Virus record (IMG/VR): IMGVR_UViG_3300035212_003113
Location: 124,001 to 188,000 of that record
Length of the DNA: 64,000 nucleotides
Reading direction: 5' to 3' (one strand)
The notes under the pieces were generated by a model. That model saw only the letters and a program-made list of their open reading frames with translations. It made no database searches and had not been told where the DNA came from. How positions within the stretch are numbered: position 1 is the stretch's first letter; every line of letters begins with the position of its first letter. The translations under genes and the position numbers were made by a program. Positions 2,704 through 25,666 of the stretch are shown here, piece after piece.

Positions 2704-4007
2704 TGGCAGAGAAAAATTTCTTGGACAAGCTAAAGCAGAAGGCCGGCGAAGTATTAGGTCACCCGTATTTGCAGCAGGCTTCGTCGCTGGGAAATAATCT
2801 GCTTGAAATTACTGCTAATCTCACGCACAATAAAAATCCGCTCAGCATTGGATCTGCTGTGCTTGCTGGAGCAAATGTAATTGCGGATGCCCTGAACGTC
2901 GAATTCACCAATCCTATAAACTTCTACGCATCAAAGCACGACCTGCGCGTACATGACGGACACCTTCACAAGCTCCTGTTGCGCTCCGGAGTTACCAGCC
3001 AATTCCCGCTCGCAACTGTTCTTAAGTATGATACAATGAGTTTTGTAAAGCTGGCTTTTAGCGAAGAGTCGGCCATGTACTGGATTAAGCAAGTGCCACA
3101 GGTAAAGTCGTATGACGTCTATGCTGCGACAGACGAATCTGCAAATCAATACTGGGTTAGTCCTAATTTCGACAGCTCATTGGTACACAATTTTCTGTGG
3201 AGTAAGTTTAAAAACGGCATAAATCTATCCTATGGCAGCTCTGCTGATGATCATTCAGGACTAGACGTAGAAATCTCAGAGCTTCCAGACCTAGGGACAT
3301 ATACCGAGCTAACCGAGCGGTCTGCTGCGGAAATGGTCGACTACATCAAGCTTTCAAAGAGCATTGGAATAAGCCGCAGCTTCCTGCTGTACGGCAAGCC
3401 TGGAACTGGCAAGACAAGCTGGACCGAGCAGATCGCGAAGTCATTCGGTAGCCGGCTTGTCAAGGTAGACTCCTCATTCTTAGAGCAAGTAGATAATAAA
3501 GAGATTGAGCAGATCCTGTCGCTGCTTAAGCCAGAGCTGGTACTGTTTGACGATTTTGATCGGGTTGATTTCGAAGAATTCGAAGGCAAGTTCCTCTATA
3601 TAACCGAGAACTTAAAGCGCAAATATCCTAATATTGCGTTCTTTGCTACCGCCAACAACACCGAGGTCATTGGCGAAGCTCTTATGCGACCAGGCCGTTT
3701 TGATGAGAAGTACGAGTTCTCTTGCCCAACATCAAAAGCTTGCCTAGAGATAATGGACGTTTACGCTAAGAATCTTGGCGTGCAAATTGATGCTGCGGAT
3801 GCCATGCTAGCGATATCAAAATACAGCCTTACTCCGGCAGAGTGCAAGGAGATAGTTCTGCGGTTGCGCCTACGCCCCGGCCTCAAGATAAAGGCGATAG
3901 TTGCAGATCTTAAGAAGTTTGAGATCACTGACGACAATGACGGTGAGCCCTTGCCAGAGCAAGGCGCAAAAAAGCGCGGTCGCCCGCGAAAGAACCCAGA
4001 AGAATGA
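2703..4007 (+). CDS. classical AAA+ ATPase with unique N-terminal domain
   Basis: GKPGTGKT Walker A, LFDDFD Walker B, ATAN sensor 1, RPGRFD; ATG 2703 overlaps upstream stop. Confidence 0.88.
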   Translation: MAEKNFLDKLKQKAGEVLGHPYLQQASSLGNNLLEITANLTHNKNPLSIGSAVLAGANVIADALNVEFTNPINFYASKHDLRVHDGHLHKLLLRSGVTSQFPLATVLKYDTMSFVKLAFSEESAMYWIKQVPQVKSYDVYAATDESANQYWVSPNFDSSLVHNFLWSKFKNGINLSYGSSADDHSGLDVEISELPDLGTYTELTERSAAEMVDYIKLSKSIGISRSFLLYGKPGTGKTSWTEQIAKSFGSRLVKVDSSFLEQVDNKEIEQILSLLKPELVLFDDFDRVDFEEFEGKFLYITENLKRKYPNIAFFATANNTEVIGEALMRPGRFDEKYEFSCPTSKACLEIMDVYAKNLGVQIDAADAMLAISKYSLTPAECKEIVLRLRLRPGLKIKAIVADLKKFEITDDNDGEPLPEQGAKKRGRPRKNPEE

Positions 4008-5077
4008 AAAAGATTAATTTTGTATCTCCTATAAAGACCCAGATGGGATATGCCCAGATGGCTCGTCTTATCTGGCCTGCACTAAAGCAGGCGGGTCAGG
4101 TCGGATGCCATGACATAGATATGCAAACCACGGGCGCCGAATTAGGGCCTGTTAATCGCGAAATGCTTGCCGCCAAATTTAACAGCAGCCCTGATGTTAC
4201 CATAGTTAACATGGTACCAGTATTGTGGCGGCGACTGGCTGGACAGAGCAGGAATATAGGCTATACCACATTTGAAGCCGACAGCATTCCGCGCGACTGG
4301 ACACAGACTATAAACTCTTTTGACTGCTGCTGGACAACATCTGAGTGGAACAAGTCAGTCATGGAGAACTCTGGAGTACTTAAGCCAATCCGCGTTGTCA
4401 CTCCTATCGCTGAGGCACCGGCTGTAACTGCGCCAGAGGAAGAAAAATTTACCTTCTTAGCTTCATTCCAGTGGAGTGAGCGCAAGAATCCCGGCGCGCT
4501 TATAAAGGCATTCTGCGCTGCATTTAATGGCAGCCCGGATGTGCGACTAGTAATTAAGACGCACGTAAGCTCTAATGCAGCTGCATCGAGTACTGCCGTG
4601 CAAAAAGATATTGCATCTTTGCTGTCTGGCATACAGACTCGCAAACCTCCAGATATAAAAGTAAACTGCAATATCGAGTCGGCCGCCAGCATCCAAAAGC
4701 TTAATGCTTCGTCGCATGCTCATTTTAGCATGTCTCATGGAGAAGGCTGGGGGCTTCCTGCATGGGAAGCGGCTCTAGCTGGCAAGCCGGTAATAGCTCC
4801 AGGTTGGTCGGCAACATCTGAGTGGCTTGGTAGCAACTATCCGTACAAGGTGCGATATAATATGACTCCGGTATCTGGAGTTAGCCGAGAGATCTCTCCA
4901 TTCTTTGATATCTCAATGAGCTGGGCAGAGCCACACATTGATGATGCTGTAGACAAGCTGCGATATGTGGTAAAGAACTATTCGACAGCAGCCGAAGTTG
5001 CACGGCAGCGTGCGGCAGAGCTGCTGCAAGAATACAGTGAAGAACGTACGCTGTCCGCTATAATCAATAGCATCTGA
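4004..5077 (+). CDS. GT-B fold glycosyltransferase (GT4-like)
   Basis: GYAQMAR, TTFEAD, RKN, SHGEGWGLPAWEA (EX7E motif). Confidence 0.88.
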   Translation: MKKINFVSPIKTQMGYAQMARLIWPALKQAGQVGCHDIDMQTTGAELGPVNREMLAAKFNSSPDVTIVNMVPVLWRRLAGQSRNIGYTTFEADSIPRDWTQTINSFDCCWTTSEWNKSVMENSGVLKPIRVVTPIAEAPAVTAPEEEKFTFLASFQWSERKNPGALIKAFCAAFNGSPDVRLVIKTHVSSNAAASSTAVQKDIASLLSGIQTRKPPDIKVNCNIESAASIQKLNASSHAHFSMSHGEGWGLPAWEAALAGKPVIAPGWSATSEWLGSNYPYKVRYNMTPVSGVSREISPFFDISMSWAEPHIDDAVDKLRYVVKNYSTAAEVARQRAAELLQEYSEERTLSAIINSI

Positions 5078-5087
5078 CTGGAGATAT

Positions 5088-5771
5088 ATGAACCTGGCCA
5101 TGACAATGACGGCATTTCGCCGAGCAGATTACCTAAAGACTGTTCTTAAAAGCCTAGAGGGCAATTCTGGCACAGAAGACTATGTCCTGCATTTTGGCGT
5201 AGAACCGGTTGACCAGAACGTCATCAATGTATGTAGAGGCGTAAGCTTTATGCGTACGGTTACAACCGTAAATCCCGAGCGTCTAGGAGTACTCAAGAAT
5301 CCATTCGAGCTGCTGCGCCGCACATTTGACACTGGCGCTGACGGAGTGTTATATCTAGAGGATGACGTCGTACTTAGTCCAGATGCAGTTGCAATGGCTT
5401 CTTGGTATTTCAATCATCCTGCTGCAAACAACTATATCTGTCTAAATCTATATAACCACGACAGTGTACCAGGAGCTGATCCAGCCGCTCTATTTGGCGG
5501 AGATAAATTCTCTGCCCTTGGTATCGGCATTACGCGCCATCAGTGGAAGACGCATTTCGAGCCAAACTGGGAAAAGGATAAGCGCGGCTGGGACTTCAGC
5601 ATTACCGGCTTGCTTTCAAGCGGCATGAAGGTATTGCAGCCCCGCTACTCCCGATCACACCATATCGGTCGCGAAGGCGGAATCCATTACCGAGCAGTGC
5701 TTCATGACAAGATGTATGTGAACAATGCTCTGTGGACTGGAAACGTCAGCGACTTTAAGATCGAGGAGTGA
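5088..5771 (+). CDS. GT-A fold glycosyltransferase
   Basis: AFRRADYL N-terminus, YLEDDVVLSPD DxD-type motif, GWD, RSHHIG. Confidence 0.8.
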   Translation: MNLAMTMTAFRRADYLKTVLKSLEGNSGTEDYVLHFGVEPVDQNVINVCRGVSFMRTVTTVNPERLGVLKNPFELLRRTFDTGADGVLYLEDDVVLSPDAVAMASWYFNHPAANNYICLNLYNHDSVPGADPAALFGGDKFSALGIGITRHQWKTHFEPNWEKDKRGWDFSITGLLSSGMKVLQPRYSRSHHIGREGGIHYRAVLHDKMYVNNALWTGNVSDFKIEE

Positions 5772-6338: not shown

Positions 6339-6946
6339 AGCTCGAGTTATACATAATCAGATATGGCAGCCGAGAAGAGTTGCTAGATTCAGAGCATTCT
6401 GATGTATGTGTAACAATCGTCATGGCCCTACCACCAGAAATACGCGCTAGGATTAGCGGAGTAGGACCAAGCTGGACGAGTAGTAGTGGAGATGGCAACG
6501 TTGAATTGCGTTTTTCTCCTGGCACATTTATAGTCAGCCGCGTAGACAGGAATATATTTGTACCGTTTTTTCTAGAGGATGCAGGTAGTTTTGGTTTGCT
6601 CCGCTGGCAAATGGCAAGATATGCTCGCACCGGATTATGGATTGAGCCACGAGAAGGCATCAATTCTAGCACACTAGGATTTAGGACTCCGCATTCAAAA
6701 TGGGAACGAGTGGAGATGTTTGCCCTGGTAGGTGCTGCTCCACTTATTTTTCCACTGTTAGTACTAGCTGACAATGTTTTAAAAACAGTCAGAAGGATAA
6801 CTGGCTATTTTAAAAACGCGTTGCGCCGGGCGCTACCAACGCGCGCGCCCGCGCGGGCGCGCGGCGGGGCGGCGGCGGCGGCGGGGCCGCGCGCGGGGCG
6901 CGGGGGCGGGGGCGCCCGGCGCCGAACTTGGCAAGATATAAAATGA
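6335..6946 (+). CDS. hypothetical protein, possible membrane helix; 3' end runs through a GC-only tract
   Basis: ATGA overlap with upstream gene; hydrophobic FALVGAAPLIFPLLVLA; true end uncertain. Confidence 0.4.
   Translation: MKLELYIIRYGSREELLDSEHSDVCVTIVMALPPEIRARISGVGPSWTSSSGDGNVELRFSPGTFIVSRVDRNIFVPFFLEDAGSFGLLRWQMARYARTGLWIEPREGINSSTLGFRTPHSKWERVEMFALVGAAPLIFPLLVLADNVLKTVRRITGYFKNALRRALPTRAPARARGGAAAAAGPRAGRGGGGARRRTWQDIK
6840..6924. repeat. G/C-only low-complexity tract with 22-bp perfect palindrome and G-runs
   Basis: cgcgcgcccgcgcgggcgcgcg followed by (ggc)n and five runs of at least 4 G. Confidence 0.8.
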
Positions 6947-6954
6947 GGTTTAAT

Positions 6955-8058
6955 GTGAGTGAAGCTTTTTCAATGCCATCTCTTTATTCTAGGACTGAGA
7001 CCGGTGCCGTCCAGGTTTGGATTGTAGAGGTCGAAGACAATCGCTTTAGAACAATCAGTGGCCAACTAGAGGGCAAGAAGATCACTTCAGAATGGACTGT
7101 CTGCCACGGCAAGAACACTGGTCGCAAGAATGCTACAACAGATGATCAGCAGGCACAGGCAGAAGCGGCTGCAAAGTGGAAAAAGAAGCTAGAGTCGGGC
7201 TACCGCGAATCGGTAGACCAGATTGACCAGCGAGCCTTTATCGAACCGATGCTTGCCAAAAACTACCCGGACTACGCCGACGAGATCCGGTTCCCGGTGT
7301 TCTCCCAGCCAAAGTATGACGGCATCCGCTGTGTGGTAGATGCCTCTTCTATGCGCACCAGGAACGGTAAGGCTATCCTTAGTGCACCCCATATTCAGGC
7401 AGCCCTTGCCCCGATTTTTGAAAAATTTCCAAATTTGGTGCTTGATGGCGAGCTGTACTGCGACAAGCTTGCAAACGACTTTAACAAGATTTGTTCGCTA
7501 GTTAAGAAAACAAAACCAGCGGAAGCTGACCTTGTTGAGAGCGCTGTCAGCATTCAATACTGGATTTATGATATCGCAGACTCCTCTCTAGCATTTTCGC
7601 AGCGAACTGCCTGGATAAAAGACAATATCCCCGCCAGCGATTGCATAAAGATCGTTCCTACTGAGCAAGTAGACGACGCTAGCCGGCTAGATGCACTGTA
7701 CACCAAGTACATGGACGAGGGTTACGAAGGACAGATGGTGCGCCTCGACAGCAAGTACGAGTTCAAGCGCAGTCGCTCGCTCCTAAAGCGCAAGGAATTC
7801 GTTGACGAGGAGTTCAAGATCCTAGGAATTATCGAGGGCGAAGGCAACAAGACCGGCATGGCCGGGTCAATGATCTTTAAAAATGCCGCCGGATCGCAAT
7901 TTAATTCAAACATAAAGGGTGACCGGGAATACCTGCGCAGTCTGCTGCTAAACTCAGGGACAATCGTAGGCAAGCTTGCAACAGTAAAATACTTCAATCT
8001 AACGCCTGATGGCGTGCCGCGTTTTCCTTATGTCGTGGCAATCAGAGATTACGAGTGA
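6955..8058 (+). CDS. ATP-dependent DNA ligase with N-terminal WGR-like domain
   Basis: PMLA, KYDGIR (motif I), LDGELY, IYDI, EGQMVR, LLKRK, RFP. Confidence 0.95.
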   Translation: MSEAFSMPSLYSRTETGAVQVWIVEVEDNRFRTISGQLEGKKITSEWTVCHGKNTGRKNATTDDQQAQAEAAAKWKKKLESGYRESVDQIDQRAFIEPMLAKNYPDYADEIRFPVFSQPKYDGIRCVVDASSMRTRNGKAILSAPHIQAALAPIFEKFPNLVLDGELYCDKLANDFNKICSLVKKTKPAEADLVESAVSIQYWIYDIADSSLAFSQRTAWIKDNIPASDCIKIVPTEQVDDASRLDALYTKYMDEGYEGQMVRLDSKYEFKRSRSLLKRKEFVDEEFKILGIIEGEGNKTGMAGSMIFKNAAGSQFNSNIKGDREYLRSLLLNSGTIVGKLATVKYFNLTPDGVPRFPYVVAIRDYE

Positions 8059-8061
8059 AAC

Positions 8062-8520
8062 ATGAAAATAACTAAAGCATCAACCGCTGGAATTGAATTA
8101 ATCAAGAAATTCGAGTCATTCGTCGCCAAGCCTTATAAGTGCAGCGCCGGAGTGCCAACAATTGGCTACGGTGCAACGTACTATCCGGATGGTCGCAAGG
8201 TGACTCTGAATGATCCGCCCATTAGCGAAGCGTACGCAGTCTCGCTGTTAGAAGAGATGCTGGTTTCATTTGAGAAGTCAGTAGATTCTTTTTGCCGTGA
8301 TGACGTTAATCAGAATCAGTTCGACGCTCTTGTTTGCTTTGCCTATAACATAGGGACGAGCGCTCTAAAAAAGAGCACGCTGTTAAAGAAAGTAAACGAA
8401 AACCCGGCGGATCCTACGATCCGAGCGGAGTTCTTGAAGTGGAACAAGGCTGCTGGGCGAGTGCTAAAGGGCCTAACTCGTCGTCGCGAAGAAGAGGCGG
8501 CGCTCTATTTCAAAGCCTGA
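8062..8520 (+). CDS. GH24 phage lysozyme (endolysin)
   Basis: LIKKFE, GVPTIGYG, NQFDALVCFAYNIG, GLTRRREEE. Confidence 0.93.
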   Translation: MKITKASTAGIELIKKFESFVAKPYKCSAGVPTIGYGATYYPDGRKVTLNDPPISEAYAVSLLEEMLVSFEKSVDSFCRDDVNQNQFDALVCFAYNIGTSALKKSTLLKKVNENPADPTIRAEFLKWNKAAGRVLKGLTRRREEEAALYFKA

Positions 8521-9615: not shown

Positions 9616-9986
9616 AGCTCGTTTATGTTGCCGGTCCGTATCGTGGCCCATCTACATGGCAGATCGACCGCAACATAAGTGCTGCACGCGAATGGGGTAT
9701 GCTGGTCGCAATGTGCGGAGCATATCCGGTAATTCCTCATTCAAATACTGCTCATTTTGATGGTACACTAGATGACCGATTCTGGCTTGAAGGCACTCTC
9801 GAGTTGCTATCAAGATGCGACGGCAGCATATTCATCCCTGGATGGATCCGGTCTACCGGATCTCGTGGTGAATGGACCTTAGCAGAGCGCATGGGAATTC
9901 CTGCTTTGGATCTAGAAGAAGTAGATCTTGGGTCGTCAATCAAGATACTAACTGGCTGGATTTCTGGCCTAGGTGCTCGCAAATGA
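9612..9986 (+). CDS. DUF4406/DUF1937-like protein (nucleoside deoxyribosyltransferase-like fold)
   Basis: VYVAGPY, PVIPH, LLSRCD, GWIRSTGSRGE. Confidence 0.75.
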   Translation: MKLVYVAGPYRGPSTWQIDRNISAAREWGMLVAMCGAYPVIPHSNTAHFDGTLDDRFWLEGTLELLSRCDGSIFIPGWIRSTGSRGEWTLAERMGIPALDLEEVDLGSSIKILTGWISGLGARK

Positions 9987-10426
9987 ATGCAACAATGGCA
10001 GCTAAGTTCAAGGCACTTGTAGACAAGCTCGAGGGCACGTCCCTACCGCATGGCGCGCTCGCCTGCAGCGATAGCCGGCGCTGGCGAGATCCTGCCGTTG
10101 ATACAGAGCTACTGCTATCAAAAGCAGAGGCCGCCGGTTCCGCTGATTTCGAGGAAGTGCTGATGCTATGTGATCGCATTCACGAACTAGAGGCCGAGCT
10201 AGACTTTTTAAACTCTTCGTATGCGCCTGATGATGATTCAAATCTAACTGCAGGCGGCATCAAGATTGCGCGAAATGCACGAGCACTGATTGCCTTGAAG
10301 ACAAAAAATGAACGGCTGGCTGGCGCGTGCAAAACTGCTATTTCAGAGATACTGCTTGCGTCGGAATTGTCTACTGAAGCAAGAAATCGAATGCTTCTCG
10401 TTATCTCTGCCGCACTATCTGACTGA
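9983..10426 (+). CDS. hypothetical protein
   Basis: ATGA-coupled ORF with coiled-coil character. Confidence 0.6.
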   Translation: MNATMAAKFKALVDKLEGTSLPHGALACSDSRRWRDPAVDTELLLSKAEAAGSADFEEVLMLCDRIHELEAELDFLNSSYAPDDDSNLTAGGIKIARNARALIALKTKNERLAGACKTAISEILLASELSTEARNRMLLVISAALSD

Positions 10427-10450: not shown

Positions 10451-10490
10451 GAGCCGATCCAGTATTACGATTGGATCGGCTCAGATTTTT
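10451..10490 (+). terminator. hairpin, putative intrinsic terminator upstream of lon
   Basis: gagccgatcca-N10-tggatcggctc followed by agattttt. Confidence 0.6.
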
Positions 10491-10539
10491 AATCTGTAAG
10501 ATTCTAAGACAAATGCTGCATTCCGCAGCCGGAGTATAA

Positions 10540-12960
10540 ATGACATCAAGTAGTCGTCCAGAATTCAATATGAGCGAAGTGCCCGAGCAGCTACCTCTCC
10601 TGCCACTTCGCAACAGCGTATTTTTTCCAGGGGCGGTTATGCCGCTCACAATCGGCCGCCAGAAGACCATCCGTCTTATCGAAGAGACTATGCGCGAGAA
10701 TGCGCTTATTGGCGTCGTGGCTCAGCGTTCGCCCGAGATCGACGACCCAGCCGCTACCGATATGTATCAGATCGGCACGATTGCGCGAGTGATCAAGCTT
10801 ACTCGCACGGGCAAGGAAGGTTTTTCCATCGTAGTGGAGGGCCTTGCCCGATTTAAGACTGATGAGATTACCCAGACCGATCCGTACTTCTTTGCTCGTG
10901 TAACGCCACTGCTTGACGTTGGCGCGGGCGACGCCGAGACGGCTGCGCTCGCAGCAACAGTAAAGGCGACTGCTCGTGAAATCGTCGATATGCTTCCCGA
11001 GATGCCAGTCATGGCCAAGCAGCTACTCGAGAGCATCTCTGACCCAGGCCACCTGGCAGATCTCATCACGGCGAACATGGATGCCATGATCGAGGAAAAG
11101 CAGGAAGTTCTTGAGTCACTAAACGTCAAGAACCGACTGAAAGCCGTTCTCAATCTGCTGACTCAGCAGGCTGAGGTCACTAAGCTGAGCAACAAGATCA
11201 ACTCGCAGGTAAAAGGCGAGATGAGCAAGTCGCAGCGCGATTACTACCTCCGTCAGCAGATGAAGGCAATTAAGGACGAGCTAGGTGAGCGCGAGGATGA
11301 CGAGAGCGGGCTTGACGAGCTAGAGCGTCGACTGCGTAACGCCGGTCTCTCTGAAGAGGCGGAGAAGGCCGCTAATCGTGAGCTGCGACGCCTCCGCAAC
11401 ATGCAGCCAACCCAGGCTGAGTACACTGTAGCGCGTACCTATCTCGAGTGGCTTGCCGAAATGCCATGGGTCACTGCTTCTGTAGATAATCTTGATATCA
11501 GCAATGCCCAGCGCCAACTTGACGAGGACCACTACGGCCTCGACAAGATTAAGAAGCGTATCGTCGAGTACCTCGCCGTCCGCAAGCTGAAGGCCGACAT
11601 GAAAGGCCCAATCCTTTGCTTTGTAGGCCCACCCGGTGTAGGCAAGACATCACTCGGTCGTTCAATCGCTGATAGCCTTGGCCGCAAATTTGGGCGTATT
11701 GCGCTGGGCGGTGTTCGTGATGAGGCCGAGATCCGCGGTCATCGTCGCACATACATTGGCGCTCTCCCAGGTCGCCTTATTCAGGCTATGAAGAAGGCTG
11801 GCACAACGAACCCGGTAGTTCTTCTTGACGAGATCGACAAGCTCGGTCATGACGTACGAGGAGATCCCGCTGCTGCGCTGCTTGAGGTACTTGATCCAGA
11901 GCAGAATAACAGCTTCAATGACCACTACCTTGATTTGCCATATGACCTTTCCAAGGTCCTGTTTATCGCGACGGCTAACCAGCTCGACACAATTCCTGCG
12001 CCGCTCCGTGATCGCATGGAAATCATCGAAGTCCCTGGCTATACTTTCGAGGAAAAACTAAACATTGCTAAGCAGCACCTGGTGCCAAAGCAGATGCGCG
12101 AACACGGTATCACTGATGCACACATCGAGATCCCTGATGCGACCCTGTTGAAGCTTGCTATGAGCTATACCCGCGAAGCCGGTGTACGTAATCTGGAGCG
12201 TGAGGTTGCTAGCGTTTGTCGCGGAGTTGCCGTAGATGTTGCTCGTCACGATGCCACTGCTGGTGAGTTTAACCGTGTTGTCGTAGATGTTTCCAAGCTA
12301 GATGACATCCTCGGCGCCGAGCGCTACTTCAATGAAACTGCCGAGCGCACGTCGGTCCCTGGCGTTGCGACCGGTCTTGCCTGGACGGCCGCAGGCGGCG
12401 ACCTGCTCTTCATCGAAGCAACCAAGATGGGCGGCAAGGGCTCACTGATCCTTACGGGCCAACTTGGCGATGTCATGAAGGAATCGGCTCAGGCAGCCAT
12501 GTCATGGATCCGCAGCCGTGCTGTAGACCTCGGCATTGCGACTGACCTTGAGCACCACTTCCTTGACAAGAGCGACCTGCACCTCCATTTCCCGGCTGGC
12601 GCAATTCCAAAGGATGGTCCTTCTGCCGGCGTAACGATTACTACTGCAATTGTTTCGCTGCTAACTGGCAAGAACGTACGCTCTGATACTGCGATGAGCG
12701 GCGAGATCACTCTGCGCGGCCACGTTCTACCAGTAGGCGGAATCAAGGAAAAGGTACTTGCTGCGCATCGCGGTGGTGCTCGTCGCGTAATCCTGCCCGC
12801 TCGCAACGAAAAAGATCTACGTGATATTCCAAAGAATGTACGCGAAGAGATGGAGTTCATCTTTGCGAAGACAATCGATACCGTGCTGGAGAATGCTATC
12901 GAGGGCGGCTTTCACTTTAGAATGGGTGACGGCACTACAGTGCCTCAGGCCGATGCCTGA
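10540..12960 (+). CDS. lon: Lon protease (LonA), LonD/BsgA-like
   Basis: [12 protein letters not shown]-domain, [23 protein letters not shown] catalytic Ser, GGIKEK catalytic Lys. Confidence 0.97.
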
Positions 12961-12964: not shown

Positions 12965-12992
12965 AAAAAGGGCCCGCAAGGGCCCTTTTTTT
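12965..12992 (+). terminator. intrinsic terminator
   Basis: aaaaagggccc-gcaa-gggccc plus T7. Confidence 0.9.
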
Positions 12993-13006: not shown

Positions 13007-13618
13007 ATGATGAAGAACGGAAGATTTATAGTTATAGAGGGGGCAGACGGCGTTGGCTCGACTACCCAGGCGAAGCTACTGGTCGAGCACCTTAATAGGG
13101 CCGGCGTACAAACCGTCTTCACAGCAGAGCCATCCGGTGGAGAGATCGGCACACTAGCTCGAAGAATGCTGCGGGGGGACTCTAAGCAAAAGCCCGAAAC
13201 GCTGGCACTGCTATTCGCTGCAGACAGGCTTCAGCACTACCACTCTGAAATTGCACCGGCACTAGAACACGGAATTACGGTAGTTTCGGACAGGTATGTG
13301 TTATCTAGCCTTGTTTACCAGTCACTAGATATTGCAACAGACTGGGTAAGGCAAATAAACAGCTTTGCACCGGCCCCCGATGCTACTGCACTAATAACAG
13401 TGCCTTTCGAGACTGCTTGGAGCAGGATCCGCAGCCGAATTGCTGCTGGCAACACCGAAGAGATTTTTGACAAGAGGGACCTGCAACAAAGGATCCATGC
13501 CCTATACGAACAACTATTATTGGACGTAAATGGTTATATGGTAGACGGCAGTGGCACACCAGAGGAAGTATTAAACCTGCTTATTAAAGCAGTTGCGCCA
13601 CATATTGCCGCTATCTGA
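13007..13618 (+). CDS. tmk: thymidylate kinase
   Basis: FIVIEGADGVGSTTQ P-loop, TAEPS, LLFAADR, SDRY, SSLVYQ. Confidence 0.93.
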   Translation: MMKNGRFIVIEGADGVGSTTQAKLLVEHLNRAGVQTVFTAEPSGGEIGTLARRMLRGDSKQKPETLALLFAADRLQHYHSEIAPALEHGITVVSDRYVLSSLVYQSLDIATDWVRQINSFAPAPDATALITVPFETAWSRIRSRIAAGNTEEIFDKRDLQQRIHALYEQLLLDVNGYMVDGSGTPEEVLNLLIKAVAPHIAAI

Positions 13619-13624: not shown

Positions 13625-13957
13625 ATGAGCGAGGCAGACAGGCTGTATTTCGAGGCTCTGAACGCAATAAAAGAGGCAGCTGATCAGCAGGTCGGCCCCC
13701 TGAGCAGCAATACCCGGCGCGTAGCTGCTGCCAAGGCAGACATAAGTGACGCCCTTATGGCCCACGGAGTAGACCTTATTATTCAGGCTCTGATGCTGGA
13801 CCTTCAAGAAGATATAGAGCTGCGCAAGAAGGTCGGAGTCGAGTGCCGAGTAGCAGAAAAAAAGCTAGAGATGCTATCCAAGGCGCTTTATTGTTCTATT
13901 CGAAATGCAGATAAGCCTGTGATTGAGATAGAAGAGTTTGAGGAACTTGATGAGTAA
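13625..13957 (+). CDS. hypothetical protein
   Basis: GAGG RBS; in-operon ORF. Confidence 0.6.
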   Translation: MSEADRLYFEALNAIKEAADQQVGPLSSNTRRVAAAKADISDALMAHGVDLIIQALMLDLQEDIELRKKVGVECRVAEKKLEMLSKALYCSIRNADKPVIEIEEFEELDE

Positions 13958-14375
13958 ATTTGAATTGCTGTCCAGCGATCATCCTGCCCTGCGGCAGGTG
14001 TGCAGGCCGGTGAGTTTTGATGATGATATCCTTGAGCTGCGCGAAGCGCTCTTTCGCATATGCAAAGAAAATGCCGGCATGGGTCTGGCAGCAAATCAAA
14101 TAGGCAGCAATCTACGGGCTTTCGTAATAGACAATGGCGGATTAAAACTTTATGCAAATCCTGAAATAGTAGAGGCATCAGAGCCTTTCGTTTTTGATGG
14201 AGAGGGCTGTTTGTCCTTTCCGGGCGAGGTATTATGCACCCGCCGCTACAAAAAAATTCTGCTGCGCAGCGATAGCGGTCCGGATGAAATTCTGACCGGT
14301 ATCGTTGCAGTTGCAGCCCAGCATGAGCTGGATCATTTAAATGGCATAACAATGCACGATAGGAGTAAGATATGA
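13950..14375 (+). CDS. def: peptide deformylase
   Basis: GMGLAANQIG, EGCLS, QHELDHLNG motifs. Confidence 0.95.
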   Translation: MSKFELLSSDHPALRQVCRPVSFDDDILELREALFRICKENAGMGLAANQIGSNLRAFVIDNGGLKLYANPEIVEASEPFVFDGEGCLSFPGEVLCTRRYKKILLRSDSGPDEILTGIVAVAAQHELDHLNGITMHDRSKI

Positions 14376-14638: not shown

Positions 14639-15051
14639 TGATCCGCAGGATCAATGAGGAACTAGCAGCGGGCAAACTTCTGCCCGTTGTTTTTCCATTT
14701 CCACCATCAAAAATACCAGTTGATGACGCACTAAACGTACGAGCAGATGCAGAGCATGTTCTATACAGCTCCTTAGTCTGGCTAGTAGACGAATCCGCTT
14801 GGGGCATTTTTGAGTTCGATCAAACGATACATGATGCGCTAACTGGCTACGCTTTCCGTAACGGTGGCATGCAGAAGCTAGAATGTCTTCTTAGTAGATA
14901 CCCAGATGGAAGTCTGCGTATAAATGCTGGAAGAATCTTATCTCCTGCTATTGACATTATCGGACCTGATGTTTATAATGAAATGCGTGGGCGCGCAGGA
15001 CGCCTCAAAGATCGCTACCTGAAGTTTGAAAAGTATACCTTCATGGTATAA
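14635..15051 (+). CDS. hypothetical protein
   Basis: ATGA-coupled 138-aa ORF. Confidence 0.6.
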   Translation: MMIRRINEELAAGKLLPVVFPFPPSKIPVDDALNVRADAEHVLYSSLVWLVDESAWGIFEFDQTIHDALTGYAFRNGGMQKLECLLSRYPDGSLRINAGRILSPAIDIIGPDVYNEMRGRAGRLKDRYLKFEKYTFMV

Positions 15052-15061
15052 TGGAGAAAAA

Positions 15062-16774
15062 ATGAAAGCACGTGATATTGTATTCGGCAAAGAGGCGCAG
15101 GACAAGATTACTCGCGGCCTCGAAAAGACTGCGAAAGCCGTACAGAGCACCCTCGGGCCACGCGGCCGCAACGTACTGATTCAGACGCCCTCTGGTTACC
15201 AGTTCACGAAGGATGGGATTACAGTCGCCAAGAACGTAGAGTTTAAGGATGCGTTTGAAAACATGGGCGCCCAGCTTGCTCGTGAAGCCGGCAATCGCTC
15301 GGTTCGTGCTGCAGGTGACGGTACCTCTTCTACGATCACCCTTCTCAATGCTATTGTGCAGGAAGGCAAACGTCAGATCAGCCTCGGTACCGATCCCATG
15401 AGCCTTCGCCGTGGCATTGACGCTGCGTGTACGCGTATTGTTAAGTGGGTCGAGGATCAAGCGGTACCAGTAAAGGGCATGGAAGATCTACTTCGCGTTG
15501 CCACTATCTCTGCAAACGGAGATGGCGAAATCGGCCGAATTATCGCAGATACGCTTGACAAGGTTGGTACTGATGCCACCGTCACCCTGGAAGAGGGCAA
15601 GGGAAATGTCACGAAAGTTACTCTGACAAAGGGCTTTGAGTTTGACCGTGGCATGGTCACCGAGCATTTCATGCGCGATTTTGAAAAGCAGCGCACGGTT
15701 TACGGTGACTCGGTTGACGACAGCATTCTCGCTCAGACGGACGCGCGTTTTTCAAACGCAGAAGACCCGCGCAGTGCGTATGTATGGCTCATCAACGGTC
15801 GCCTGGGCAGCCTTGCACAGGCCGAGGTCCGGGAGTCTTTCACCGCAATCCTGAATATGATTCACCAGACAAACGTTCCATTGCTTATTGTTGCTGAGGC
15901 TGTCGAGGGTGATGCCCTTAAGCTGCTTGCGCAGAATGCCATGCGCGGTATTCTTAATGTCGTAGCCGTACGAGCGCCTGGATTTGGCCAGGATCGCCGC
16001 GATCTAATGGAAGATCTTGCTACGGCCACTGGCGCAAAGGTTCGTCGTACCGATGCTGGTGACTCGCTCTTTGAGGATTTTTCTCTGGCAGAGCTCGGGA
16101 CTGCGCGCTTTGTGCAGGTTGGTCTGGACAAGACGATCATCATTCCACCTGATGAGCAGGCCGAGTCAATCGAGCGCCGTGTCTCAGAAATTGATGCAAA
16201 GATTGCCGTAACCACCGAAGATGATTTCCGCCACACTCTCACCCGCCGGCGCTCAATGCTTACGGGCGGCGTAGCGAATATCATTGTAGGCGGTCGCAGC
16301 GACGCCGAGGTGCGCGAGAAGCGCGATCTGTATGAGGATGCGCTGCTGGCTGCTCGTGCTGCTGCTCAGTCTGGCATCGTTCCTGGCGCGGGCACAATGC
16401 TCACTCGCGCCTCGGACATGCTAGCTGATTTCAGCACTGGCAACGAAGAGCAGAACGTAGGCGTTCATATTCTAAAGAAGGCCCTGCTTGTTCCATTCCA
16501 GGAGATCATCAAGAATGGCGGTGGCAGTGCAGAGGTAGTGCTTCATAATGTTCGCACGTCAACGGATCGTCATGCGGGCTATGATAGTAATCGTAACGAG
16601 TATTGCAATCTTCTAGAGCGCGGCATTATCGACCCCGCCCGTGTGATTGTAAGCGAAGTAGAGCATGCATGTAGCATGGCCGGCCTACTGCTGAGCACTG
16701 ATGTTGTCATTGGATTTGCGGATGAGCCTGATCTGATCAGAGCGCTGTCCGCAGCAAAACAGCAAAACGCTTGA
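15062..16774 (+). CDS. groEL: group I chaperonin (GroEL-like)
   Basis: TLGPRGRNV, TKDGITVAK, AGDGTSS, FDRG, APGFG, GIVPGAG, GIIDP. Confidence 0.95.
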   Translation: MKARDIVFGKEAQDKITRGLEKTAKAVQSTLGPRGRNVLIQTPSGYQFTKDGITVAKNVEFKDAFENMGAQLAREAGNRSVRAAGDGTSSTITLLNAIVQEGKRQISLGTDPMSLRRGIDAACTRIVKWVEDQAVPVKGMEDLLRVATISANGDGEIGRIIADTLDKVGTDATVTLEEGKGNVTKVTLTKGFEFDRGMVTEHFMRDFEKQRTVYGDSVDDSILAQTDARFSNAEDPRSAYVWLINGRLGSLAQAEVRESFTAILNMIHQTNVPLLIVAEAVEGDALKLLAQNAMRGILNVVAVRAPGFGQDRRDLMEDLATATGAKVRRTDAGDSLFEDFSLAELGTARFVQVGLDKTIIIPPDEQAESIERRVSEIDAKIAVTTEDDFRHTLTRRRSMLTGGVANIIVGGRSDAEVREKRDLYEDALLAARAAAQSGIVPGAGTMLTRASDMLADFSTGNEEQNVGVHILKKALLVPFQEIIKNGGGSAEVVLHNVRTSTDRHAGYDSNRNEYCNLLERGIIDPARVIVSEVEHACSMAGLLLSTDVVIGFADEPDLIRALSAAKQQNA

Positions 16775-18558: not shown

Positions 18559-21500
18559 TTACACGTTACTGATGCAGTACCAGGCAGTGCTTATCCAGAC
18601 CCAAGTCTGCCCGCCACCAGCGGTCATCGTGCGCGCTACGCCGGTCGAAGGGGTTACCGTAGACCCGGCGCCCGAGATATTGACGAGCGAGATGGTGAGG
18701 CCGTCGTCGCTCACGGTCATCGCAGGGAGTGCCACTGCAGCTACGTTCACTGTGTAGGCGACGTTCGTGCGGAGGTTTGCTGCTGTTGGTGTTGCCGGAC
18801 AACTGCCCAGCGCCTTCACGCTGCTGGCCAGTTTGTCGAGAGCCGACCAGACCGTGGTGGGGTCAGGGTCGAGCCATTGGGTAGGCACCGTCGGCGTGTA
18901 CGCGAGCGAGCGCGAGTCGTCGAGGAAGTCGTAGGCGACGAGCGCGGAGACGGTGTACGTCGTCCCGGCAGCGGGGATCGGACTCCACGCAGGCGACACC
19001 GTGATGACCGTCCCGGTGTTGGACGAGACGGTGCGCGTCTGCCCCGATCCGGTTCCGCCCGTCAACGTGATCGTGCCGCCCACCCACTGATTTGTCGTGA
19101 ACGCCTTACTGGTGTCCGTGATCGTCGCAGATGCGCCCGCTGTTGCCGTTCCAGAACTCGTCGGGATGTTCAGCGGGCGCGCAGTGAGCACGCCGGTTGT
19201 CGTGCTGCGGCTGAACGCGAGCGTCGTGTACGACGTCGAGTCCATCTTGTAGCGAGCGCCGCCTCCAGAAGAACCGATCTGGTACCGCGAAGCCGGGATT
19301 CCCGTACCCGAATACACGCGGAACTGGTCGACGACCATTCCGAGGTAGGACGTCGAGGTCGATCCGGTGACACCGCCATTGTCGACGGTGCCGAGCATCG
19401 TGCGGTCGATGTCATAGATGCGGCAGCCGTCGATCTCACCGATGACCAGAGTCGGGCCGAGGGCTGCGCCAAGTGTTGAGTTATGGCACTTGAGCGTGAC
19501 GACACCTGACGGTGCTTTGTTCGCCGTGCCGATCAGCGAGTAGCCGGTGCTATTGGCAAGTGGCAGCAGCGGCGACCACGCGGGCGTGACCGTCAGCGTG
19601 TTCGCCGTGTTGGAAACGACCGTAGCCGTCTGGCCCGAACCTTGTCCTCCCGTCAGCGTGACCGTAGCACCAGCATACTGGTTGACCGTCCATGCCTTCG
19701 TCGTGTCTTGCAGGGTCGTGCTGCTCTGGGTGCCCGTGGCTTGGCCCGTGCCGAGGTTCCACGTCGACGGGCTGGAAGCGTAGGCGTAAGGCACCGCGCC
19801 GAGATAGGTGCGAACGAAGCCTGCCTCGCCGACGGTGCAGCCGTCGATCTCGATGACGCACGTCGGAAGACCGTTTGTCGTCGGGATCGTGTACGCGGTC
19901 GCGATAACCTGACCACCAATCAGGTTGGCCCGGTTCGCGTAGAAATTGAACTGCCCGTAGTTGGCATCCCAGTTTTGGCCGAGGTTCGATCCGGGGAAAG
20001 TCGGCTCGTTGAACAAGAGAGTGCTCAAGCCCGTGACCAACAGCGGATCAGAAGTCGCGTCGGCCTCGACACCGCCACCGACAGCACCCGTGATCTCGAA
20101 CGTCGTCAGCGCACCCGCACCAGTCCACGGCGCAGGGAAGCTCGCCCTGATAGACTGCATGTTCGATGCTGGGAAGTCGGCACGCACAGCAGCGAGCGTG
20201 ACGTTTCCGACGATCTGCACGCCGTTGCCGATCAACTGCACTCGCGCCCGCTTGAAGCCGAGTGTCACGTCACCGACGTAGCGCCCCGGCGCAAGCTGGA
20301 AGATCAGCTTCTCAGTGACGAACTGGCCGACGCTTGCGTTGTAGGTGGTGTTGCTGGGATCGCCAAGCGAAGGAACCTGCGAGTAGGCGTAGTTGATGCT
20401 CGCGTAGGGTTGGCCGAGCGTTCCGCCACCGGGGGCATCGGTGCCGTTGACCGGGTCGACGTAGACGGTGAGCGCCCCAGCGAAAACTGCGCCCGTTGCT
20501 GGCGCGCTCCACGCCACGCCAGTCGCTTGCGTGCTGTCGGCGGTGAGTACTTGACCGTTGGTGCCAACTGGGACACGAGTATTCGCGGTGCTGAAACCGA
20601 GAACGTCGCCCTTTGTCGTCAGCGGCGAAAGCGCGCCGAACGCTGCAGAGACAGTCGTCTGTCCTGTACCACCATTTAATACAGGAAGTATTCCTATTAT
20701 TTCACTAGGGCCGTCACCTAGATCAATAGGGGATGCAGGTGACTGCACTACGCCATCAATCACATGTATGACGCCTGTCCCGGATATTCCAAGGATAGTT
20801 GTCAACACATGGCTTGGATGACCATCTCCAAAATGGAAGGACACAGTGTGGCCAGCATCTGTGCATGTAGCTTCAAGCTCTACATAAACTCTGTCAGTTG
20901 ACAGCACAGTTGTTGATGAAAGCACAACAGAGCAAGTGTACTGTGTAATTGACCCAGGATTATATATAGGCGTTGGCTCTGAAGTAGTAAGAAGATTGGC
21001 GGTATATCCGTCATACTTATATACTTTTGCACGCATGTATGCTGCGCCGGGAAGGTCAACATCTGATGACGCCCATACGTTGAAGTCCCAGATTCCAGCT
21101 GGAATCACAGTTATCCCCGGAACATCAACTGCAGTCAAGAAGCCACCTACATAATCGTATACTCCTCCAGTTGACAGTACATTTGAAGTAAAGACCGTGT
21201 CTGCTGGATTTGATAAAAGAGTAAGTGCCTTAGTTGAATAAGGCGTAGACGGGAGTCCACCTAGTGGAGATTCTGCATCAGAACCGGCCTCCAGGAAGTA
21301 GGTCACTCCTCCACCGCCTCCAGAACCGCCGGATGCATTTGCTCCAGGAACCCAGGCGCTGCCGCTCCACGTAAGAACTTGCCCCGCTACTGGAGAAAGG
21401 CTGGACACCGCATTGCCGCGCAGTGCAATCACATCTGGAGAGAAAAGACTGCCCGACAGATCGCCGTCTACAGTAGATGATTTAATTGCGTCAATTGCAT

Positions 21501-22092
21501 CTTGAACATTCGTAACACCAAACGCAGGAGCAGCCAGCGAATCATCGTAGCTTATTCCATCTGCACTGTTAATGATTGCGGGCGGCACTACCCACGACAG
21601 GGCTCCATAACCATCATTGGCAAGCATCCCCTCCTCATCAATCGGCCAACCAGGAAAAGAGATATCAGGCGCAAGTCCTCCTGATGAAGCGAGTGGTGAT
21701 GTCGCTGTAACGCTCGACACTCCGCCACTGCCACCTCCCCCGCCGGACAACCACTTCAGCTCTCCGCTCTCGAATCCAAGGACCGCTCCCTCGAAATAAG
21801 CATTAGATGTCGAGAAGGAATCGGCAGATACGCCTGCGCCAGCATGGGTTGGGTTTACAAACTCGATGACTCGGATTACATTTAGTACTTTCCAGAGCCT
21901 GTATATCTCGCCACTTGGAGACTCCAGTTCTTTTAGAACGGTGGCTGTTAGTGAGCCAAAATCATTATACTCTAGCTCCGCGTACAAGTCTCTCTCTTCA
22001 CCAGGACGCAGCTTGACCCTGCCAAGAATATTAACATCTGACCTTGATATATTCCTTATTAAAAGTACTGGTTTTATCGGCGTAAAAGACAT
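18559..22092 (-). CDS. tail fibre / virion surface protein D (1177 aa, mosaic)
   Basis: Gly/Thr/Ser-rich; N-terminal ~120 aa paralogous to 22399..25647; fibre motifs GQVLTWSGSAW, LTTKGD, GTNGQVLTADST; YVDPVNGTD. Confidence 0.8.
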   Translation of the reverse strand: MSFTPIKPVLLIRNISRSDVNILGRVKLRPGEERDLYAELEYNDFGSLTATVLKELESPSGEIYRLWKVLNVIRVIEFVNPTHAGAGVSADSFSTSNAYFEGAVLGFESGELKWLSGGGGGSGGVSSVTATSPLASSGGLAPDISFPGWPIDEEGMLANDGYGALSWVVPPAIINSADGISYDDSLAAPAFGVTNVQDAIDAIKSSTVDGDLSGSLFSPDVIALRGNAVSSLSPVAGQVLTWSGSAWVPGANASGGSGGGGGVTYFLEAGSDAESPLGGLPSTPYSTKALTLLSNPADTVFTSNVLSTGGVYDYVGGFLTAVDVPGITVIPAGIWDFNVWASSDVDLPGAAYMRAKVYKYDGYTANLLTTSEPTPIYNPGSITQYTCSVVLSSTTVLSTDRVYVELEATCTDAGHTVSFHFGDGHPSHVLTTILGISGTGVIHVIDGVVQSPASPIDLGDGPSEIIGILPVLNGGTGQTTVSAAFGALSPLTTKGDVLGFSTANTRVPVGTNGQVLTADSTQATGVAWSAPATGAVFAGALTVYVDPVNGTDAPGGGTLGQPYASINYAYSQVPSLGDPSNTTYNASVGQFVTEKLIFQLAPGRYVGDVTLGFKRARVQLIGNGVQIVGNVTLAAVRADFPASNMQSIRASFPAPWTGAGALTTFEITGAVGGGVEADATSDPLLVTGLSTLLFNEPTFPGSNLGQNWDANYGQFNFYANRANLIGGQVIATAYTIPTTNGLPTCVIEIDGCTVGEAGFVRTYLGAVPYAYASSPSTWNLGTGQATGTQSSTTLQDTTKAWTVNQYAGATVTLTGGQGSGQTATVVSNTANTLTVTPAWSPLLPLANSTGYSLIGTANKAPSGVVTLKCHNSTLGAALGPTLVIGEIDGCRIYDIDRTMLGTVDNGGVTGSTSTSYLGMVVDQFRVYSGTGIPASRYQIGSSGGGARYKMDSTSYTTLAFSRSTTTGVLTARPLNIPTSSGTATAGASATITDTSKAFTTNQWVGGTITLTGGTGSGQTRTVSSNTGTVITVSPAWSPIPAAGTTYTVSALVAYDFLDDSRSLAYTPTVPTQWLDPDPTTVWSALDKLASSVKALGSCPATPTAANLRTNVAYTVNVAAVALPAMTVSDDGLTISLVNISGAGSTVTPSTGVARTMTAGGGQTWVWISTAWYCISNV

Positions 22093-22131
22093 GGTTCGCT
22101 CCCTCTAATTATTCTTTTCTGCAAAAAGCCC

Positions 22132-22374: not shown

Positions 22375-22398
22375 TCACTGCGGCATGCATCTGCCTTG

Positions 22399-25647: not shown

Positions 25648-25666
25648 GAGTCGCCCCCTCTTCTAC

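What the first reader, a model, noticed from the sequence alone, without database searches (positions are those of the whole stretch)
10540..12960. Lon resembles the myxobacterial developmental protease LonD/BsgA
The N-terminus [27 protein letters not shown]...GVVAQR...DP...GTIARVIKL...VEGLARF closely matches my recollection of M. xanthus LonD/BsgA, which is needed for fruiting-body development, rather than the vegetative Lon. It has its own flanking hairpins. Inference: the host is in Myxococcota, and the phage might influence developmental or stress proteolysis. Few large myxophages are characterised.
Basis: partly seen in the sequence, partly recalled or inferred. Interest (0 to 1): 0.62.

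Follow-up and report, generated by a model that had tools for sequence, protein, structure and literature searches.

The report
Huge lake phage carries myxobacterial Lon
A 372-kb lake-water phage carries an intact ATP-dependent Lon protease, taken long ago from an uncultured class of Myxococcota and kept under strong selection; it belongs to the same gene lineage as the Myxococcus developmental protease LonD, but nothing ties it to development.

Summary
The ORF is real: window 10540-12960 (+) encodes an 806-aa full-length LonA with all catalytic motifs intact. It sits between two terminator-like hairpins.

**LonD call.** The protein is 64% identical to M. xanthus Lon protease 2 (LonD/BsgA) and 48% to the other paralog (LonV). 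An ML tree puts it in the LonD-type clade (support 100/99).

**Donor.** It is not close to Myxococcaceae LonD. It nests (100/98; AU p 0.0001) among chromosomal Lon genes, 76-80% identical, of one uncultured GTDB class of Myxococcota. In some streamlined genomes of that class, LonD-type Lon is the only LonA. Orthology therefore says nothing about development.

**Phage context.**
- The window is part of a 371,675-bp IMG/VR virus record with terminal repeats, found in lake-water metagenomes.
- All five relatives whose contigs were fetched (79-94% identical) keep the gene at the same place in a similar gene order.
- dN/dS is about 0.03, and GC has drifted to 55% against 65-70% in the nearest cellular loci.
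- Phage-lineage change is concentrated in the substrate-binding N domain.
- Peptide deformylase and a GroEL-like chaperonin lie nearby.

**Verdict.** This is a long-retained, host-derived proteolysis gene, a new member of a known kind. A Myxococcota host is plausible but not shown.

The parts
10451..10482 (+). Terminator-like hairpin after the upstream ORF (9872-10426): 13-bp stem, 6-nt loop, T-rich tail. It marks the 5' edge of the lon unit.
   Evidence: Kept in L139 (94% relative) but not in L142, L136 or L138.
10515..10529 (+). Small 5-bp hairpin just before the ribosome-binding site, function unknown.
   Evidence: The stem is kept in L139 and nearly kept in L142, with different loops.
10531..10534 (+). 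Ribosome-binding site GGAG, 6-9 nt before the ATG at 10540.
   Evidence: Invariant in all six aligned phage sequences.
10540..12960 (+). lon coding sequence, 806 aa (P0001), full-length LonA of the LonD/Lon2 lineage.
10591..11166 (+). N-terminal substrate-binding domain (residues 18-209). This is the part that has changed most in the phage lineage.
   Evidence: Pfam PF02190, 168.9 bits. Domain identities, signature substitutions, statistics.
11614..12252 (+). AAA+ ATPase module and lid (residues 359-571), with Walker A K369 and Walker B D430/E431.
   Evidence: PF00004 and PF22667. Motif positions, invariant columns.
12283..12903 (+). S16 protease domain (residues 582-788) with the catalytic pair Ser695 and Lys736.
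   Evidence: PF05362, 288 bits. The phage Ser aligns with the catalytic-site position in E. coli Lon 6u5z, which reads Ala in that chain. Positions.
12965..12990 (+). Intrinsic-terminator-like hairpin 5 nt after the lon stop codon: 11-bp stem, GCAA loop, T run.
   Evidence: Kept at the same place in L139, L136, L138 and L141, with different but complementary stem sequences.
13007..13618 (+). Thymidylate kinase, the next gene downstream. The start is probably the ATG at 13007 or 13010, not the overlapping GTG at 12821.
   Evidence: PF02223, 142 bits; phrog_761. Relatives have a 197-201-aa gene after the terminator. Sequence.
13938..14375 (+). Peptide deformylase, in the conserved neighbourhood.
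   Evidence: PF01327, 104.9 bits; phrog_2890. Present in L136, L138 and L141.
15026..16774 (+). GroEL/Cpn60-like chaperonin, in the conserved neighbourhood.
   Evidence: PF00118, 218 bits. Present in L138, L139, L140 and L141.
6928..8520 (+). ATP-dependent DNA ligase (6928-8058) and T4-type endolysin (8062-8520), the conserved upstream phage neighbours.
   Evidence: The same pair lies upstream of lon in L136, L137, L138 and L141; the endolysin is also seen in L139 and L142.

Best explanation
Window 10540-12960 encodes a working LonA-type protease: N-terminal substrate-binding domain, AAA+ unfoldase and a Ser-Lys peptidase. An ancestor of a clade of freshwater huge phages took the gene from a bacterium of one uncultured class of Myxococcota. 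It belongs to the paralog lineage that M. xanthus calls LonD/BsgA (Lon protease 2). The phage clade has kept it at a fixed place, apparently as its own transcription unit with a conserved ribosome-binding site and terminator. Peptide deformylase and a GroEL-like chaperonin lie close by.

Shown here: family and lineage membership, intact catalytic motifs, cell-to-phage direction of transfer, retention, strong purifying selection, and a shift of sequence change into the N domain.

Inferred: during infection the phage makes its own Lon hexamer. This keeps ATP-dependent protein turnover under phage control, both removing misfolded or unassembled proteins and degrading a changed set of host or phage substrates chosen by the altered N domain. 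It would act alongside phage-made deformylase and chaperonin. A role in host development is not indicated.
For: - Family: TIGR00763 1009 bits (cut-off 608); four Lon Pfam domains; solved Lon structures at E 1e-225. Walker A, Walker B, Ser695 and Lys736 are present and aligned.
- Lineage: 64% identity and 1012 bits to M. xanthus DK1622 Lon protease 2 (LON2_MYXXA), against 48% and 731 bits to the other M. xanthus Lon. IQ-TREE LG+G4 on 88 rows puts the phage in a clade with LonD at 100/99, with LonV outside among other phyla.
- Transfer direction: the phage clade (8 rows, 100/100) is sister to a 68.6%-GC bacterial contig of G077 (100/98) and nested among chromosomal genes. One of these is G127, 77% identical, on a 1.33-Mb contig. 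Holding the 39 cellular rows together is rejected (delta lnL 86, AU p 0.0001).
- Phage setting: a 371,675-bp IMG/VR record with direct terminal repeats, CheckV 100%. Phage-type neighbours and PHROG hits.
- Retention: all five fetched relatives, 79-94% identical, keep lon at the same place in a similar gene order, on independent contigs up to 152 kb. Seven IMG/VR contigs carry it. Five lake-water runs from different studies hold 94% or more of the sampled words of the stretch, three of them flagged as possible sources of this DNA.
- Selection and age: dN/dS 0.026 for the one pair with unsaturated dS (0.40); other pairs have saturated dS. Gene GC is 55% against 65-70% in the nearest bacterial loci and 51% for the phage.
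- N-domain shift: phage against G077 is 72% identical in the N domain and 86-87% in the ATPase and protease. Among the bacteria the N domain is the most conserved part (89-93%). Variable columns are 37% (N domain) against 20% (rest) in phages, and 25% against 36% in bacteria. Ten of 14 phage-fixed substitutions lie in the N domain.
- Own unit: conserved RBS and downstream terminator.
- Neighbourhood: deformylase and Cpn60.
Against: - No expression or activity data. No RNA run held the stretch.
- The role (general quality control, or chosen substrates) is inferred only from family knowledge, neighbourhood and the pattern of change.
- The faster N domain could simply reflect loss of host adaptor contacts rather than new targets. 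It is still strongly constrained (dN/dS 0.043).
- The three 'proteostasis' genes are separated by other genes and a terminator, so they are not one operon.
- No promoter was identified upstream.
- Four Pfam models for terminase, T4 capsid and T4 portal found nothing in the genome. One of them (Gp23) rang in no control genome, so it says nothing. No capsid, portal or terminase gene was identified, so the viral nature rests on IMG/VR, the terminal repeats, gene content and PHROG hits.
- The tree used LG+G4; the mixture-model runs did not finish.
Confidence: 0.6

Rival explanations
1. One reading: the phage Lon stands in for, or overrides, host LonD/BsgA to steer a developmental or starvation programme of a myxobacterial host (fruiting, sporulation, MrpC processing).
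For: It is in the same orthologous lineage as LonD. In M. xanthus, bsgA (also called lonD, MXAN_3993) is needed for development and for MrpC2 production (PMC4320627).
Against: The donor is a different, uncultured class that holds neither Corallococcus nor Labilithrix. Three streamlined 1.8-2.5-Mb members that were checked have LonD-type Lon as their only LonA, so there it should be the housekeeping Lon. Identity to M. xanthus LonD is only 64%, with 54% in the N domain. The phage is found in lake water. No developmental gene was linked to it.
Confidence: 0.08
2. Take-over or counter-defence protease: the changed N domain directs the phage Lon at particular host proteins, such as defence effectors or regulators, rather than at misfolded proteins in general.
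For: Phage-lineage change is concentrated in the substrate-binding N domain, while the ATPase and protease stay as conserved as between bacteria. Published comparative work reads patchily distributed jumbo-phage peptidases, such as ClpP and the ClpS adaptor, as possibly aimed at the host (PMC7824862).
Against: No substrate is known and no defence or anti-defence gene was found next to it. The N domain is still under strong purifying selection with no sign of diversifying selection. This overlaps with the best explanation rather than excluding it.
Confidence: 0.22
3. Not a phage gene: host DNA at a prophage edge, a binning or assembly chimera, or the record is a plasmid or other large element rather than a virus.
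For: Most of the other LonA hits in IMG/VR lie at the very ends of 15-60-kb contigs, as expected for host flanks of prophages. Lon hits in deposited phage records are unannotated faecal contigs or look like host flanks. Pfam terminase, T4 capsid and T4 portal models found nothing in the genome.
Against: The gene lies about 135 kb into a 372-kb record with terminal repeats. Ligase, endolysin, thymidylate kinase and deformylase flank it on both sides. It has the same place and neighbours in independent assemblies. Its GC has moved to the phage's level. PHROG tail-fibre and virion-protein hits, SbcCD-like nuclease and a tail-fibre chaperone domain are present.
Confidence: 0.05
4. A decaying passenger gene with no function for the phage.
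For: None beyond its cellular origin.
Against: The frame is full-length and open in all six phage sequences compared. dN/dS is about 0.03 with saturated synonymous change between most pairs. All catalytic motifs are intact. The RBS and terminator are conserved.
Confidence: 0.02

Closest known systems
Myxococcus xanthus LonD / BsgA (Lon protease 2, LON2_MYXXA, MXAN_3993)
   Same: Same LonA architecture and same paralog lineage: 64% identity over 781 residues and one clade at 100/99 support.
   Different: The phage protein sits in a sister subclade that matches another, uncultured class of Myxococcota. Its N domain is only 54% identical. It is carried by a virus. The developmental role of LonD (PMC4320627) is a property of Myxococcus and was not tested here.
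Chromosomal LonD-type Lon of the uncultured Myxococcota class (genomes G077, G122, G127, G087, G031, G072, G039)
   Same: The nearest relatives: 76-80% identity, the same length, and the immediate sister group in the tree.
   Different: These genes have 65-70% GC against 55%. Among themselves their N domain is the most conserved part, whereas the phage copies have changed mostly there. G077, G122, G127 and G039 also carry one or two further LonA paralogs.
M. xanthus LonV and E. coli-type Lon (NF008053 / PRK10787)
   Same: Same family, domains and catalytic residues.
   Different: Only 48% identical. They fall in a separate clade with Lon of other phyla. The E. coli-type model scores 821.7, below its 891 cut-off.
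Protease genes already noted in jumbo phages: ClpP and the ClpS adaptor (Iyer et al. 2021, PMC7824862)
   Same: Phage-borne parts of ATP-dependent proteolysis with a patchy distribution, proposed there to act on the host.
   Different: Those are a bare peptidase or an adaptor that need host partners. This is a complete, self-sufficient unfoldase-protease. That paper does not mention Lon.
LonA genes on other huge IMG/VR contigs (L233 on a 356-kb contig, L235 on a 437-kb contig)
   Same: Full-length LonA lying inside very large viral contigs among replication genes and unknown ORFs.
   Different: Only 43-46% identical to this one and equally distant from LonD and LonV, so they are separate acquisitions. 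Their viral status was not checked beyond their neighbours.

Membership tests
LonA (endopeptidase La, MEROPS S16, TIGR00763) | Whole-protein match above the curated cut-off | tested here: met
   1009.4 bits against a cut-off of 608, covering model positions 1-794 of 795.
LonA (endopeptidase La, MEROPS S16, TIGR00763) | Three-part architecture: N-terminal LON domain, AAA+ module with lid, C-terminal S16 protease | tested here: met
   PF02190 (residues 18-209), PF00004 (359-496), PF22667 (521-571), PF05362 (582-788).
LonA (endopeptidase La, MEROPS S16, TIGR00763) | Walker A and B motifs and the Ser-Lys catalytic pair | tested here: met
   K369, D430/E431, S695 and K736 are present and invariant in the alignment. 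The Ser aligns to the active-site position of E. coli Lon.
LonA (endopeptidase La, MEROPS S16, TIGR00763) | ATP-dependent proteolysis by a hexamer | not testable with these tools
   Needs purified protein. No fold or complex prediction was run, because sequence matches to solved hexamers are at E 1e-225.
LonD / BsgA lineage (orthologs of LON2_MYXXA) | Groups with LON2_MYXXA and not with the second Myxococcus Lon in a tree | tested here: met
   A 55-row clade with LonD at 100/99; LonV lies elsewhere with Lon of other phyla.
LonD / BsgA lineage (orthologs of LON2_MYXXA) | Clearly more similar to LonD than to LonV | tested here: met
   64% and 1012 bits against 48% and 731 bits.
LonD / BsgA as a developmental protease | Needed for fruiting-body development, B-signalling or MrpC2 production | not testable with these tools
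   Known for M. xanthus only (PMC4320627). Needs complementation of a lonD mutant.
LonD / BsgA as a developmental protease | Comes from a lineage with a dedicated vegetative Lon beside it, so that LonD is the specialised copy | tested here: inconclusive
   The nearest large genomes (G077, G122, G127, G039) have two or three LonA copies. Small genomes of the same class (G046, G131, G057) have only the LonD-type. The phage itself has one Lon.
E. coli-type Lon (NF008053) | Score above the curated cut-off | tested here: not met
   821.7 bits against a cut-off of 891.
LonB, LonC and BrxL (Lon-related) | Score above the curated cut-off | tested here: not met
   45-92 bits against cut-offs of 517-723.
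Host-derived auxiliary gene of a phage | Viral genes on both sides, kept in related phages, cellular origin shown by a tree | tested here: met
   Neighbours; same place and similar gene order; nesting within cellular genes.

The most novel reading that the evidence does not exclude
A whole clade of freshwater huge phages has turned a captured LonD-type protease into a take-over tool. The re-shaped N domain would pick out particular host proteins (regulators, stress or dormancy factors, or defence proteins) of an uncultured, possibly planktonic Myxococcota host. The phage, not the cell, would then decide what is degraded during infection, working with its own deformylase and chaperonin as a virus-run proteostasis system.
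Probability: 0.2. Interest if true: 0.7.

Novelty: new member of a known kind. Interest (0 to 1): 0.45.

Why it matters
Complete ATP-dependent proteases are cell-type machinery. In the deposited phage records searched, Lon appeared only in unannotated faecal contigs, in records annotated as cellular lon, or in a prophage-derived record. The papers searched and read do not describe a phage LonA.

Here a full LonA has been kept for a long time, under strong selection, by a clade of huge lake phages. Its donor can be narrowed to one uncultured class of Myxococcota. That gives three things:
- a concrete lead to the hosts of these phages;
- a natural experiment on how a Lon N domain changes once it leaves its cellular setting;
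- a testable case for phage-run proteostasis (Lon, deformylase and chaperonin together).

It also warns against carrying the word 'developmental' from M. xanthus LonD to its orthologs. In the streamlined genomes of this class that were checked, this is the only LonA found.

Tried and rejected
- **Mixture-model trees.** The LG+C20 runs did not finish in two 300-s calls. I used LG+G4 with ultrafast bootstrap and SH-aLRT instead. The long-branch warnings concern other paralogs, not the phage clade.
- **Genome contigs pattern scan**. It depends on exact peptide words and returned mostly hits near 50% from other phyla, so it is not a ranking. The search over 301 Myxococcota genomes and the word search were used instead.
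- **Viral hallmark genes.** Pfam Terminase_6C, Terminase_6N, T4 Gp23 and T4 portal found nothing in the genome. Gp23 rang in no control genome, so that blank carries no weight. A PHROG scan of ten large ORFs gave tail-fibre, virion-structural, weak tape-measure and ribonucleotide reductase hits, but no capsid, portal or terminase.
- **Naming the donor class.** I can say only that the class has 38 species genomes and holds neither Corallococcus nor Labilithrix.
- **Literature on phage-encoded Lon.** Phrase searches found nothing relevant. The jumbo-phage review, the huge-phage paper and a 2026 myxophage preprint do not mention Lon.
- **Direct host evidence.** CRISPR spacer matching was not attempted.
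- **Unpublished genome.** G197 appeared.
Full report
**1.
A single ORF runs from 10540 to 12960 on the + strand and encodes 806 residues.
- It is a full-length LonA. The NCBIfam equivalog TIGR00763 scores 1009 bits against a cut-off of 608 over the whole model. Pfam finds the N-terminal LON substrate-binding domain, the AAA module, the Lon lid and the S16 protease domain. Solved bacterial Lon hexamers match at E about 1e-225.
- Walker A (K369), Walker B (D430/E431), the catalytic Ser695 and Lys736 are all present and aligned.
- The two hairpins are real: 10451-10482 after the upstream ORF, and 12965-12990 five bases after the lon stop. Each is followed by T-rich sequence. The scan did not find more such sites than its shuffles, so the support comes from conservation. 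The downstream hairpin is at the same place in all four phage relatives aligned there, with different but still complementary stems. The upstream hairpin is shared only with the closest relative aligned.
- A GGAG 6-9 nt before the ATG is invariant in all six sequences, which fixes the start.

**2. What carries it.**
- The window is bases 124,001-188,000 of a 371,675-bp IMG/VR virus record with direct terminal repeats, rated 100% complete by CheckV. It has 51% GC and five tRNA genes elsewhere in the genome.
- Around lon lie an ATP-dependent DNA ligase, a T4-type endolysin, a nucleoside deoxyribosyltransferase-like protein, thymidylate kinase, peptide deformylase and a GroEL/Cpn60-like chaperonin.
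- Further along are tail-fibre-like giants (one with the endosialidase chaperone domain), an SbcCD-like nuclease pair and an exonuclease. PHROG tail-fibre, virion-protein and ribonucleotide reductase hits lie elsewhere in the genome.
- Four Pfam models for terminase, T4 capsid and T4 portal found nothing, and no capsid, portal or terminase gene was identified. The viral nature therefore rests on the record's class, its repeats and this gene content.
- The lon stretch with its flanks is held almost whole (94% or more of sampled words) by five lake-water runs from different studies. Three of these are flagged as possible sources of this DNA. No RNA run held it.

**3. LonD or LonV?**
- One Myxococcaceae genome in the sample (G120) proved to be Corallococcus macrosporus. 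Its two Lon genes fall in 90%-identity clusters with the two M. xanthus proteins. One cluster holds the DK1622 protein that UniRef names Lon protease 2, LON2_MYXXA (P0123, 827 aa). The other holds the second M. xanthus Lon (P0143, 818 aa).
- That Lon protease 2 is LonD/BsgA rests on my knowledge of the Swiss-Prot entry. It agrees with PMC4320627, which equates bsgA, lonD and MXAN_3993.
- The phage protein is 64% identical (1012 bits) to LonD and 48% (731 bits) to the other paralog.
- I built an IQ-TREE LG+G4 tree of 88 Lon proteins: phage relatives, all Lon copies of several Myxococcota, and 17 from other phyla. The phage protein lies in a 55-row clade with M. xanthus and Corallococcus LonD at 100/99 support. 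LonV lies in another clade with Lon of Thermodesulfobacteriota, Binatia and Pseudomonadota.

**4. It is not close to Myxococcus LonD.**
- Inside that clade the phage group (8 rows, 100/100) is sister to the Lon of genome G077 (100/98), which lies on a 68.6%-GC contig. The pair is nested among chromosomal Lon genes 76-80% identical to the phage's. One of them sits on a 1.33-Mb contig.
- Forcing the 39 cellular rows of this subclade into one clade, with the phage outside, costs 86 log-likelihood units (AU p 0.0001). The group was chosen after seeing the tree. The transfer therefore went from cell to phage.
- Every genome-derived member of this 47-row subclade belongs to one GTDB class of Myxococcota with 38 species genomes. 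That class holds neither Corallococcus (Myxococcia) nor Labilithrix (Polyangiales, by NCBI taxonomy). I could not name it.
- The class mixes large high-GC genomes (5.6-8.3 Mb) with streamlined low-GC ones. Many of the latter, 1.3-2.5 Mb, gave a single Lon match, and in the three checked with the family model (1.8-2.5 Mb) the LonD-type gene is the only LonA.
- So 'LonD-type' is a lineage label, not a functional one. In those streamlined genomes it must do the ordinary work of Lon.
- The word search of 5.8 billion proteins agrees. All named hits at 70-77% identity are Myxococcota or 'Deltaproteobacteria' MAGs. Deposited phage records reach only 44%.

**5. The gene is an old, maintained resident of a phage clade.**
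- All five relatives whose contigs were fetched, 79-94% identical, lie on contigs from other samples, up to 152 kb long. The gene order is similar: ligase, endolysin, small ORFs, lon, usually thymidylate kinase, then (where present) deformylase and Cpn60. Seven IMG/VR contigs carry close relatives.
- Synonymous sites are saturated even between copies 94% identical in protein. The one unsaturated pair gives dN/dS 0.026 (N domain 0.043, ATPase 0.010, protease 0.021).
- The gene's GC (55%; third positions 58%) has moved most of the way from the 65-70% of the nearest cellular loci to the phage's 51%.

**6. A shift in where the protein changes.**
- Between the nearest bacteria the N domain is the most conserved part (89-93% identity, against 76-90% for ATPase and protease). 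Between phage and G077 it is the least conserved (72% against 86-87%).
- Variable columns make up 37% of the N domain and 20% of the rest within the phage clade (Fisher p 2e-7). In the bacterial set the figures are 25% and 36% (p 0.001).
- Ten of 14 substitutions fixed in all phage copies lie in the N domain, seven of them in the first 125 residues.
- The N domain of LonA selects substrates (family knowledge). The pattern therefore fits either a changed substrate set or released contacts with host partners. It does not tell which.

**7. Most likely working.** This section is inference.
- The gene appears to be its own transcription unit, and its product is a complete unfoldase-protease that needs no host partner.
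- Together with a phage deformylase and chaperonin nearby, the simplest reading is that these huge phages bring protein maturation, folding and turnover under their own control during a long, protein-heavy infection. The altered N domain may add chosen host or phage targets.
- The developmental reading has only orthology behind it, and section 4 weakens that.
- A host in Myxococcota, most likely in the donor class, is a reasonable inference from a cell-to-phage transfer. No direct host evidence was obtained. The 51% GC of the phage is far below that of the nearest donors.

**8. Novelty.**
- The molecule is a standard LonA. What is unusual is a stable, selected, complete Lon in a phage clade.
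- It is not unique. Of 152 LonA-encoding stretches in IMG/VR, most sit at contig ends like prophage flanks. But contigs of 356 kb and 437 kb carry internal LonA genes only 43-46% identical to this one, among gyrase B-like, helicase and unknown genes. These are separate captures.
- I found no paper describing phage LonA.
- Hence: a new member of a known kind, of moderate interest.

**9. Housekeeping.**
- Only genetic code 11 was used.
- The large representative protein search was not needed.

Noticed in passing
window 15026-16774; L139 7933-10608; L140 4848-7523; L141 7218-9893: The phage GroEL/Cpn60-like gene is 582 aa here. In three relatives it is 891 aa, with faint LAGLIDADG or Hom_end hits in the middle, which suggests an intein or homing-endonuclease insertion that this genome lacks.
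   Followed up: no
window 54711-62807 (+): A 2698-aa ORF with no PHROG match at E 0.001. Other giant ORFs of 1444-2397 aa lie elsewhere in the genome.
   Followed up: no
window 18559-32297 (-): Four consecutive ORFs of 1081-1177 aa lie on the opposite strand. One has the endosialidase chaperone domain (Peptidase_S74), so they are probably tail fibres. Local GC rises to 62% at 18-20 kb. The equivalent gene in L138 has a weak YadA_stalk hit.
   Followed up: partly
L233 (IMGVR_UViG_3300047476_002078, 355,874 bp); L235 (IMGVR_UViG_3300021978_000001, 437,490 bp); L164 (158 kb): Other very large IMG/VR contigs carry full-length LonA inside them, 43-59% identical to this one. Their neighbours are gyrase B-like, CYTH, RecD-like helicase and unknown ORFs. 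These look like independent captures of Lon by huge phages.
   Followed up: partly
L002 / L082 / L103 (genome G002, contig JABDBI010000002.1): NCBI titles this MAG 'Methanobacteriota archaeon'. In the genome collection it sits in the same Myxococcota class as the donors, and it carries a LonD-type Lon 73% identical to the phage's on a 119-kb contig. The NCBI label looks wrong.
   Followed up: partly
genomes G046, G131, G057 (loci L145-L147): Streamlined Myxococcota genomes of 1.8-2.5 Mb, with about 41-45% GC at these loci, have a single LonA, and it is of the LonD type. This bears on how LonD and LonV arose.
   Followed up: partly
window 4004-5771 and 33488-35389: Several glycosyltransferase-like genes are present: GT4 'conflict systems' type, GT2/MGAT2-like, and an Exostosin GT47 domain protein of 633 aa. 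GT47 is an unusual family for a phage.
   Followed up: no
L139 3671-6118 compared with window 10513-10540: The 94% relatives are called as 815 aa from an upstream in-frame ATG. In the window that frame is closed by a TAA. The conserved GGAG points to the 806-aa start in all copies, so the 815-aa calls are probably nine codons too long.
   Followed up: yes
window 48666-51844 and 53177-53947: An SbcD/SbcC-like nuclease pair (as T4 gp47/gp46) and an exonuclease are present, and a weak sigma-factor-like hit lies at 53957-54745.
   Followed up: no
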